A stretch of 57,785 nt of DNA, filler included, from Bipalium vagum (lineage: Eukaryota), in assembly GCA_037834085.1 (NCBI GenBank). It is 3 parts of 3 records of this genome, joined end to end, with 100 filler letters (N's around TTAATTAATTAA, not from the genome) between each part and the next. Parts side by side here need not be neighbours in the genome. Positions count along the whole stretch, not along the records: positions 1 to 19,472 come from JBBMKC010002468.1; 2 more parts are not named here. One strand, written 5' to 3'. Below the pieces are notes generated by a model. The model saw only the letters and a program-made list of their open reading frames with translations, made no database searches and had not been told where the DNA came from. Both the position numbers and the translations under genes were made by a program. Positions 18,566 to 18,809 of this stretch are shown piece after piece. Within the stretch, counting starts at the first letter, position 1. Each line of letters begins with the position of its first letter.

Positions 18566-18809
18566 ATGTCATTGAAAATCTTTATTTTTATTTCCGTGCT
18601 TTTTTATTGTGAAGTATATTCCTTCGTTTGTTTATTTATTGTTTTTTTAGTGATAAATATTTATTATTTTCTCACCCCTTTAGGTCAGTGGACATTACAA
18701 CGAGATTTCCGATATGAAGCCGTACTTTCTGCAAAGTTCCCGTAATGAAAAGAAATGGACGGATTATCTTAGAAAAAGAATGTTCAATCTCGATAACTAC
18801 GTGAAATAA
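18566..18809 (+). CDS. putative small secreted peptide / neuropeptide prohormone, 57 aa, join(18566..18613,18684..18809)
   Basis: MSLKIFIFISVLFYCE|VSGHYNEISDMKPYFLQSSRNEKKWTDYLRKRMFNLDNYVK*. Hydrophobic signal peptide ending V-S-G; 70-bp GT-AG phase-0 intron with a pyrimidine-rich acceptor; KK and RKR sites. A possible 5'UTR intron ends at the ttattggcag acceptor at 18498. Confidence 0.62.

What the first reader, a model, noticed from the sequence alone, without database searches (positions are those of the whole stretch)
18566..18809. Hidden two-exon gene for a 57-aa candidate neuropeptide prohormone
Seen: splicing GT(18614) to AG(18683) gives MSLKIFIFISVLFYCEVSG-HYNEISDMKPYFLQSSRNE-KK-WTDYL-RKR-MFNLDNYVK*. 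The ORF track misses it. An upstream acceptor at 18498 with a possible donor near 18386 suggests a 5'UTR exon. Established: a signal peptide plus short peptides bounded by dibasic convertase sites is the architecture of flatworm secreted peptide prohormones. Inference: products could be HYNEISDMKPYFLQSSRNE, WTDYL and MFNLDNYVK. None has an amidation Gly, and I do not recognise the family, so it may be undescribed.
Basis: partly seen in the sequence, partly recalled or inferred. Interest (0 to 1): 0.75.

Follow-up and report, generated by a model that had tools for sequence, protein, structure and literature searches.

The report
New small secreted-peptide precursor gene
This is very probably a real two-exon gene for a tiny secreted peptide precursor whose five-residue core (WTDYL, boxed in by pairs of basic residues) is kept unchanged in a second copy in the same genome and in one unnamed sequence from elsewhere, but nothing yet shows that it is expressed or acts in nerve cells.

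Summary
The two-exon reading frame is in the sequence exactly as described, and it is not chance.

- **Outside homologue.** A HMMER search of exon 2 against 1.84 billion proteins gave one real hit, P0002 (43 aa, unnamed, E 2.5e-4). It shares PYF and KKWTDYL[RK]KRMFNxDxYVK-stop.
- **Second copy.** P0002 in turn finds the window gene and a paralogue on contig C217622 of the same genome. That copy has the same build: an MSIK… hydrophobic first exon, a 47-nt intron, and a second exon with KKWTDYLKKR.
- **Selection.** Between the two copies only three parts stand above shuffled background: the 100 nt before the ATG (with a TATA box), exon 1 weakly, and the C-terminal core. The core has 7 synonymous and 1 replacement difference.
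- **Copy number and family.** The coding DNA is single copy. Pfam, PDB, the Atlas and the paper searches name no family.

Not settled:
- The donor may be 18626 rather than 18614.
- The proposed 5'UTR exon is unsupported.
- Cleavage and a neuronal role are inferred.
- The taxon was not tested here.

Earlier notes of this scan report other small prohormone genes in this genome, but not this family.

The parts
18490..18541 (+). Promoter-proximal block conserved with the paralogue.
   Evidence: ungapped alignment, 56 of 95 identical over 18459-18553, concentrated in these blocks.: -100..-1 has z 5.9 and 0 of 300 shuffles reach it, while -200..-101 is at background. A function as promoter is inferred, not shown.
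18529..18535 (+). TATAAAT, 37 nt before the ATG (40 nt in the paralogue)
   Evidence: Conserved in sequence and spacing. TATA-box function is inferred.
18566..18613 (+). With the alternative donor it runs to 18625 (20 codons, adding VYSF).
   Evidence: mean Kyte-Doolittle 2.75 over residues 5-15. The paralogue's exon 1 is MSIKTIALIFVLFCLGTDLI. Exon 1 similarity has z 2.4; 7 of 300 shuffles reach it. dN 0.41 against dS 1.75.
18614..18683 (+). Intron: 70 nt from donor GTATAT at 18614, or 58 nt from donor GTTTGT at 18626. The acceptor is ...cccctttAG at 18682-18683.
   Evidence: Introns inferred in TCP-1 genes of the same genome are 40-83 nt with degenerate donors. Intron similarity to the paralogue is at background (z 1.4). 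The paralogue's donor GTTAGT aligns with 18626. No read evidence.
18684..18749 (+). Exon 2, variable N-terminal part (VSG, then HYNEISDMKPYFLQSSRNE). It carries the likely signal-peptidase site after VSG and a non-conserved spacer peptide.
   Evidence: Only PYF is shared with P0002. DNA similarity to the paralogue is at background (z 1.7).
18750..18779 (+). Conserved core KK-WTDYL-RKR. KK is 18750-18755, WTDYL 18756-18770, RKR 18771-18779.
   Evidence: Invariant K23 K24 W T D Y L K31 R32 in 3 of 3 sequences. 7 synonymous against 1 replacement difference from the paralogue. Cleavage at these sites is inferred.
18780..18809 (+). C-terminal peptide MFNLDNYVK and the stop codon (18807-18809)
   Evidence: D37, Y39 and K41 and the stop position are conserved in 3 of 3. 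MFNxDxYVK is shared with P0002.

Best explanation
A real, previously unnamed two-exon gene encodes a 57- or 61-codon secreted peptide precursor. It is one of at least two copies in this genome.

Proposed mechanism:
1. Exon 1 supplies a signal peptide (MSLK plus a hydrophobic core).
2. The first residues of exon 2 (VSG) give a small -3/-1 signal-peptidase site.
3. In the secretory pathway a PC2-type convertase cuts after KK and after RKR, and a carboxypeptidase trims the basic residues.
4. This releases the invariant pentapeptide WTDYL, an acidic Tyr-containing C-terminal peptide (MFNLDNYV, with or without K), and a fast-evolving spacer.

WTDYL is the likely signalling product. It is not amidated.

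Shown: the frame, its conservation, purifying selection on the core, the conserved two-exon build and upstream block, and the presence of convertase and 7B2 genes.

Inferred: splicing, secretion, cleavage, bioactivity and the cell type.
For: - **Outside homologue.** P0002 has whole-library E 2.5e-4, 62% identity over query 10-41, and ends at the same C-terminal YVK. Pairwise it is 20 of 30 identical.
- **Two loci found independently.** P0002 alone detects both the window exon (E 9.2e-6) and a second locus, C217622:11531-11614 minus strand (E 4.6e-4), in the 440-Mb genome.
- **Same architecture in the paralogue.** It has exon 1 MSIKTIALIFVLFCLGTDLI, donor GTTAGT, a 47-nt intron, an acceptor whose AG closes an in-frame TAG as in the window, and exon 2 ending ...DKKWTDYLKKRNSDSDEYFK-stop.
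- **Conservation is patchy.** Proximal upstream z 5.9, core z 6.6, exon 1 z 2.4. The intron, the exon-2 N part, both 3' flanks and -200..-101 are at background.
- **Purifying selection.** The core KKWTDYLxKR has 7 synonymous and 1 replacement difference, pN 0.04.
- **Sequence context.** Exon 2 is a GC island, and the intron length is typical for this genome.
- **Not a folded domain.** There is no Cys in the mature part of the window copy, so a disulphide fold is unlikely.
- **Processing machinery.** The genome has proprotein-convertase P domains (7 matches) and 7B2/secretogranin V (1 match, E 1.4e-16).
- **Precedent.** Planarian prohormones with signal peptides and convertase sites, and PC2-dependent processing, are described in PMC2953531 (section 8 and the passages found).
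Against: - There is no transcript evidence of any kind.
- No signal-peptide predictor was run. The call rests on inspection and hydropathy.
- The conserved basic residues could be conserved for a reason other than cleavage.
- KK is a weaker convertase site than KR (recalled).
- None of the peptides has an amidation Gly, which most known flatworm neuropeptides have (recalled; compare the amidated examples in PMC2953531).
- Only three family members are known.
- The donor site is ambiguous.
- Neuronal expression is untested.
Confidence: 0.62

Rival explanations
1. The gene is real and secreted, but the product is not a convertase-processed hormone. The roughly 40-residue chain, or its basic and aromatic C-terminal 19 residues, acts intact, for example as a gland, mucus, defence or antimicrobial-type peptide. 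The basic residues would then be conserved for charge or binding.
For: The whole block KKWTDYL[RK]KR..D.Y.K is conserved, not only the residues between the basic pairs. In the window copy the hydrophobic residues of the block fall at roughly helical spacing (my inspection). There is no amidation signal and no expression data. A conserved TATA-type upstream block would also suit an abundant gland product.
Against: The helical hydrophobic pattern is lost in the paralogue's second half (NSDSDEYFK), while both basic clusters and WTDYL stay invariant. The rest of the chain evolves freely (exon 2 N part at background), as spacers in prohormones do. Net charge is not conserved as such.
Confidence: 0.22
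2. Exon 2 is the last coding exon of a different, larger or differently spliced gene. The MS[LI]K exon would not be its true partner, or translation would start inside exon 2 to give a 31-residue non-secreted micropeptide from the ATG at 18714.
For: No reads confirm the junction. A 31-aa ORF (18714-18809) exists on its own.
Against: Both paralogues carry an ATG-MS[LI]K hydrophobic exon 47-70 nt upstream in the compatible phase, behind a conserved upstream block at the same spacing. The Met at 18714 is not conserved: it is Gly in P0002 and falls beside an alignment gap in the paralogue. The tailored filter found such a pairing only at these two loci in about 127 kb.
Confidence: 0.08
3. It is a chance open frame in AT-rich non-coding DNA, or a dead relic. 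AT-rich sequence readily gives Lys/Arg pairs and Phe/Ile/Leu runs.
For: The genome is very AT-rich and the peptide is short. There is no expression evidence. Only one hit turned up among billions of proteins.
Against: The frame, the stop position and 13 residues are conserved in three sequences. Synonymous sites are saturated with 1 replacement in the core. Both copies are intact. There were 0 filter hits in 20 shuffles and none in 107,651 bases of other loci apart from the paralogue.
Confidence: 0.04

Closest known systems
Planarian secreted-peptide and neuropeptide prohormone genes (spp, npp and others; 51 genes in Schmidtea mediterranea; Collins et al. 2010, PMC2953531; I read section 8 and the passages found)
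   Same: A tiny precursor with a signal peptide and short peptides bounded by basic convertase sites. Many such families are lineage-specific with no relatives outside flatworms. Convertase and 7B2 genes are present in this genome.
   Different: No sequence match to any named protein. The core motif is absent from the main texts of PMC2953531 and PMC4825013. There is no amidation Gly. The 51 published sequences are in supplementary tables that were closed, so identity with one of them is not excluded.
Proenkephalin-type precursors (non-amidated pentapeptides flanked by paired basic residues; recalled, no call)
   Same: It would work the same way: a free-acid pentapeptide ending in Leu, excised between KK and KR-type sites.
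   Different: There is no YGGF motif, a single copy of the pentapeptide rather than several, a 57-61 codon precursor without the Cys-rich N-terminal domain, and no sequence similarity. It is not a member.
Sulfakinin/cholecystokinin-type peptides (acidic residue followed by Tyr, sulfated; recalled, no call)
   Same: Both conserved tyrosines follow Asp, Glu or Asn (TDY; D[NE]Y). This is the context favoured for tyrosine sulfation in secreted peptides.
   Different: There is no C-terminal RFamide or Gly amidation signal and no alignment to that family. Sulfation is speculation.

Membership tests
Convertase-processed secreted peptide prohormone (generic kind) | N-terminal signal peptide | tested here: inconclusive
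   A basic n-region (MSLK / MSIK) and an 11-residue hydrophobic core (mean Kyte-Doolittle 2.75 and 3.07) are present in both paralogues. Small residues sit at -3/-1 (V-S-G) at the start of exon 2. No dedicated predictor was available. The joined chain was not analysed as one sequence.
Convertase-processed secreted peptide prohormone (generic kind) | Short peptides bounded by di- or tribasic sites that are conserved among relatives | tested here: met
   KK and [RK]KR are invariant in 3 of 3 sequences and bracket the invariant WTDYL. There are 7 synonymous and 1 replacement change in the core.
Convertase-processed secreted peptide prohormone (generic kind) | Processing enzymes encoded in the same genome | tested here: met
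   PF01483 P_proprotein gives 7 matches, best E 1.1e-20. PF05281 secretogranin V/7B2 gives 1 match, E 1.4e-16.
Convertase-processed secreted peptide prohormone (generic kind) | Transcript spliced as modelled and expressed in secretory or neuronal cells | not testable with these tools
Convertase-processed secreted peptide prohormone (generic kind) | Mature peptides detected biochemically | not testable with these tools
   There are no peptidomic data for this organism. The motif is absent from the searchable text of 8.4 million papers in a relevant context.
Named Schmidtea mediterranea prohormones (Collins et al. 2010) | Sequence similarity to one of the 51 published precursors | tested here: inconclusive
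   No named hit in 1.84 billion representatives or in the word-indexed 5.8 billion proteins of 23-72 aa. The motif is not in the main text. The sequences are in Tables S1-S5, which were closed. A relative as distant as the paralogue would fall below the E-value limit.
Amidated flatworm neuropeptides (FaRP, NPF and similar) | Gly before the basic site as amidation donor | tested here: not met
   There is no Gly before KK, before RKR or before the stop in any of the 3 sequences.
Enkephalin/opioid precursors | YGGF[LM] core | tested here: not met
   The core is WTDYL. The similarity is one of mechanism only.

The most novel reading that the evidence does not exclude
WTDYL is the ligand of a so far unknown, flatworm-restricted peptide signalling system. 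It would be a non-amidated, possibly Tyr-sulfated pentapeptide produced from a minimal two-exon prohormone family. The family has diverged everywhere except the pentapeptide, its cleavage sites and its proximal promoter, and it has its own receptor still to be found.
Probability: 0.3. Interest if true: 0.6.

Novelty: new member of a known kind. Interest (0 to 1): 0.45.

Why it matters
Small prohormone genes are routinely missed by gene finders. Flatworm peptide signalling controls regeneration, reproduction and behaviour, and is looked at as a drug-target space in parasitic relatives.

This locus is a clean example found from raw DNA and then supported by comparative evidence alone. It has two diverged copies and one outside relative, protein-level selection focused on a five-residue peptide and its cleavage sites, and a conserved upstream block.

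It gives a directly testable candidate:
- a synthesisable pentapeptide;
- two alternative junctions for RT-PCR;
- a roughly 55-nt conserved upstream element that may drive cell-type-specific expression.

If the family is absent from published planarian lists, it adds a new non-amidated peptide family. If it is already in a supplementary table, the result is an ordinary annotation.

Tried and rejected
- **RNA evidence.** Splicing and expression therefore stay untested.
- **More relatives.**
  - The word-indexed search of exon 2 found no candidate.
  - The profile of exon 2 plus P0002 found only P0002, 1 of 1 candidates.
  - The JGI metagenome scan gave 316 pattern matches, 0 confirmed.
  - The GTDB genome scan gave 41 pattern matches, 0 confirmed.
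- **P0001.** This 2009-aa repetitive protein (E 7.6e-6, 0 matched stretches) I take as a compositional artefact.
- **Own-genome profile search**. It found the 2 true loci and 3 marginal hits (E 0.9-3.5; L025, L026, L027). Reading them showed no MS[LI]K exon, no conserved upstream block and no stop at the family's position. They are not counted. L025 (…SKWTDYIKKCNFN-stop) could be a decayed relic.
- **Known families.** Pfam gave only sub-threshold noise: 13.5 and 15.7 bits against cut-offs of 34 and 21.9. PDB sequences gave E 0.48 or worse. The ESM Atlas gave no usable hit.
- **Papers.** The five-letter core occurs in 2 unrelated papers. The four-letter core occurs in 55 papers, of which 40 were listed and none concerns flatworm peptides. 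It has 0 occurrences in PMC4825013 and PMC2953531. Supplementary tables were closed.
- **Earlier notes.** None near the place. None holds the motif word.
- **Donor choice.** Of 25 adjacent TCP-1 exon-hit pairs:
  - 8 gave a unique frame-keeping solution, 1 gave a tie and 1 a near solution (introns 40-83 nt);
  - 12 gave no stop-free solution and 3 gave only poor ones.
  - Among 9 donors, +5 is G in 6, and +3 is A in 4 and T in 4.
  - This favours 18626 only slightly, so I leave the donor open.
- **Synteny.** No caveolin or other shared ORF lies near the paralogue, so there is no sign of a recent segmental duplication.
- **Not attempted.**
  - Structure prediction: a Cys-free 41-residue chain would not discriminate the rivals.
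  - Any search, look-up or fold of the joined two-exon protein.
- The organism's identity. It was not tested here.

Full report
**1. The observation**

- The ATG is at 18566, and 16 codons read MSLKIFIFISVLFYCE.
- GT is at 18614 and AG at 18682-18683.
- Exon 2 (18684-18809) reads VSGHYNEISDMKPYFLQSSRNEKKWTDYLRKRMFNLDNYVK and then a stop.
- The acceptor AG completes an in-frame TAG. The exon-2 frame therefore cannot be entered from directly upstream without splicing.
- Exon 2 is a local GC island: 36.5%, against 22.9% in the intron, 14.1% in the 291 nt after the stop and 21% upstream.

I did not search, look up or fold the joined protein.

**2. Is it a repeat, and is it chance?**

A DNA search of 18380-18900 in the window's own 440-Mb assembly gave 45 matches.
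- One is the window itself.
- The other 44 cover only query 408-521 (window 18787-18900), mostly the AT-rich simple sequence after the stop.
- Promoter, exon 1, intron and nearly all of exon 2 are single copy.

It asks for an ATG, a basic residue early, an uncharged hydrophobic core, a GT…AG intron of 40-90 nt, a total of 45-90 residues, at least two dibasic pairs and a hydrophilic mature part.
- It fired at exactly one start in the window (18566).
- It fired at none in 20 block-shuffled versions.
- In 107,651 bases of 31 other loci from the same genome it fired once, at the paralogue described below.
- The filter is post hoc, so it only shows that the pattern is not commonplace.

**3. Homologues**

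Two early searches gave nothing or only one hit.
- The word-indexed search of exon 2 found nothing.
- HMMER against 1.84 billion cluster representatives gave two hits at E ≤ 0.001.
  - P0001 is a 2009-aa repetitive protein with no matched stretch. I discard it.
  - P0002 is 43 aa: MNAEAGRFSHNQGPYFERMESNMNKKWTDYLKKRMFNSDEYVK.

P0002 matches exon 2 at 20 of 30 positions. The shared parts are PYF, KKWTDYL, KR, MFN, D and YVK. Both sequences end at the same residue.

What is known about the origin of P0002:
- It is a singleton from ENA, on one 971-nt contig, with no name.
- A profile of the pair found only P0002 again among 5.8 billion proteins of 23-72 aa. Scans of JGI metagenomes and GTDB genomes confirmed nothing.
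- In one search, P0002 was the only candidate that shared words with the query. The ATG-started 42-aa exon-2 ORF of the paralogue carries the same core words and did not come up. This genome's own ORFs therefore seem not to be in that collection, and P0002 probably comes from another assembly (inference). Whether that is another species or an unassembled third copy is open.

**4. A paralogue with the same architecture**

Used as a query on the window's own genome, P0002 found two places:
- the window exon (E 9.2e-6);
- C217622:11531-11614 on the minus strand (E 4.6e-4).

Read on its coding strand, the second locus has:
- an ATG exon MSIKTIALIFVLFCLGTDLI;
- a phase-0 donor GTTAGT;
- a 47-nt intron;
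- an acceptor …attttAG that again completes an in-frame TAG;
- an exon 2 MNVLCEEYMSSRDNLRRHNHNMDKKWTDYLKKRNSDSDEYFK, then a stop.

P0002 starts with MN, as this exon 2 does. That fits P0002 being the same exon called from genomic DNA (inference).

In the three-way alignment the invariant positions are N21, K23, K24, W, T, D, Y, L, K31, R32, D37, Y39 and K41. Pairwise identities are 12 of 20 for window against paralogue and 18 of 28 for P0002 against paralogue.

A profile search of the genome found only these two loci, plus three marginal hits (E 0.9-3.5). On reading, those lack the architecture.

**5. Selection**

Segment-by-segment alignment of the two loci against 300 shuffles each gave the following.

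| Segment | z | Shuffles reaching the observed score |
|---|---|---|
| -100..-1 | 5.9 | 0 of 300 |
| C-terminal core | 6.6 | 0 of 300 |
| Exon 1 | 2.4 | 7 of 300 |
| Intron | 1.4 | 33 of 300 |
| Exon 2 N part | 1.7 | 24 of 300 |
| -200..-101 | -1.5 | 289 of 300 |
| +1..+100 | -0.1 | 183 of 300 |
| +101..+200 | 0.7 | 79 of 300 |

So the duplication is old enough for neutral DNA to have randomised. What survives is a proximal upstream block, the signal exon (weakly) and the core.

Codon comparison between the two copies:
- In the ten codons KKWTDYLxKR there are 7 synonymous differences and 1 replacement (Arg/Lys). pN is 0.04 and synonymous sites are saturated.
- The last nine codons are looser: 3.5 synonymous and 10.5 replacement differences.
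- Exon 1 has dN 0.41 against dS 1.75.

This is protein-level purifying selection centred on WTDYL and its flanking basic residues.

**6. Gene model details**

Inferred introns in TCP-1 genes of this genome are 40-83 nt, with degenerate donors. There are 10 usable junctions out of 25 exon-hit pairs; 12 pairs gave no stop-free solution and 3 gave poor ones. A 58- or 70-nt intron is therefore typical.

The donor is ambiguous.
- GTTTGT at 18626, also phase 0, gives 61 codons by adding VYSF.
- 18626 is the position that aligns with the paralogue's GTTAGT after codon 20, followed by the shared GTT.GTTTATTT.
- The paralogue has no GT at the position equivalent to 18614.
- Among 9 inferred donors, +5 is G in 6. 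This slightly favours 18626.
- Either choice keeps a signal-peptide-like N-terminus with V-S-G before the likely cleavage point.

Upstream, three blocks are shared:
- TATTGG[CT]AGA (18490-18499);
- ATTC[GA]TGAAAAT (18514-18525);
- TATAAATT.CTTT (18529-18541).

The TATAAAT lies 37 nt before the ATG in the window and 40 nt before it in the paralogue.

I read this region as a proximal promoter with a very short 5'UTR. An AG is kept in both copies, however, so a (trans-)splice acceptor is not excluded. The region of the proposed donor near 18386 is not conserved.

**7. Mechanism**

- The mature part has no Cys in the window copy and evolves freely outside the core. It is not a folded domain.
- The pattern is an invariant pentapeptide between an invariant KK and an invariant [RK]KR, followed by a semi-conserved acidic Tyr peptide that ends in Lys. 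This is what a convertase-processed precursor looks like.
- The genome encodes convertase P domains (7 matches) and 7B2.
- PC2-dependent processing of such precursors is documented in a planarian (PMC2953531, section 8 and the passages).
- I therefore favour cleavage to WTDYL plus a C-terminal peptide.
- The main rival is an uncleaved secreted basic peptide.
- Both conserved Tyr residues follow acidic or Asn residues, so sulfation is conceivable. This is speculation from recalled rules.

**8. Comparison with the known, and novelty**

- No Pfam family reached its cut-off. There was no PDB relative, no Atlas lead and no named protein.
- The core motif occurs in no relevant paper text.
- The 51 S. 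mediterranea precursor sequences are in supplements I could not open. A relative as diverged as the paralogue would also escape. 'Undescribed' is therefore probable, not proven.
- Earlier notes of this scan list several other small prohormone genes in this genome and call it a planarian. I did not test the taxon. None of those notes concerns this family.

**9. Verdict**

It is a real gene with high probability (about 0.9). It is a secreted, convertase-processed peptide precursor with moderate probability (about 0.6). 'Neuropeptide' is untested. I class it as a new member of a known kind.

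Noticed in passing
window 4770-4985 (+) and 11280-11492 (-): Two diverged ORFs of 71 and 70 aa in opposite orientation both match the C-terminal half of Pfam Caveolin (PF01146; E 4.4e-10 and 9.8e-9, above the 25-bit cut-off). They are probably the last exons of two caveolin paralogues facing each other across about 6 kb that holds retroelement-like ORFs.
   Followed up: partly
window 2244-2618 (-), 15988-16491 (+), 17397-17513 (-): Fragments of Tc1/mariner-type transposases: HTH_Tnp_Tc3_2 weakly (E 0.0018), DDE_3 (E 4.7e-8) and the Mos1 HTH_48 (E 8e-10). 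The peptide gene sits about 1 kb beyond the last of them, among transposon debris.
   Followed up: partly
window 8238-10214 (-): A run of ORFs of 151-173 aa, with a 72-aa ORF (9426-9644, -) that contains a YADD-type motif. It looks like a decayed reverse-transcriptase element (motif recalled). The three ORFs sent to Pfam gave no hit at E <= 0.01.
   Followed up: partly
L025 1495-1542 (+) = G000:C55558:3486-3533: A short ORF reads MSKWTDYIKKCNFN-stop and shares 12 identical bases (the W-T-D-Y codons) with the paralogue. The profile E is only 0.9, and there is no signal exon or conserved upstream block. It is possibly a decayed relic of the family, or chance.
   Followed up: partly
L011 1561-1590 (-), paralogue exon 2 residues 13-23: BLASTP gives a weak second match: DNLRRHNHNMD of the paralogue against DYLRKRMFNLD of the window copy (E 0.10). 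It hints that the paralogue's N-terminal part is a degenerate internal duplicate of the core unit, with an RR site of its own.
   Followed up: no
window 18826-18900 and onward: AT-rich simple sequence (ATT/ATTATT-type runs) directly after the gene matches at least 44 other places in the genome at 74-91% identity. This is ordinary low-complexity DNA. It would hold the 3'UTR. The first AATAAA is 262 nt after the stop, at 19071.
   Followed up: partly
G000 TCP-1 loci L016, L019, L028-L034: This genome has very short introns (40-83 nt in 10 inferred cases) with weakly conserved donors (GTA.., GTT.. and GTG.. all occur), and several TCP-1 copies (50 exon-level matches). Some full-length copies have no intron at all and may be contaminants or retrocopies.
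   Followed up: partly
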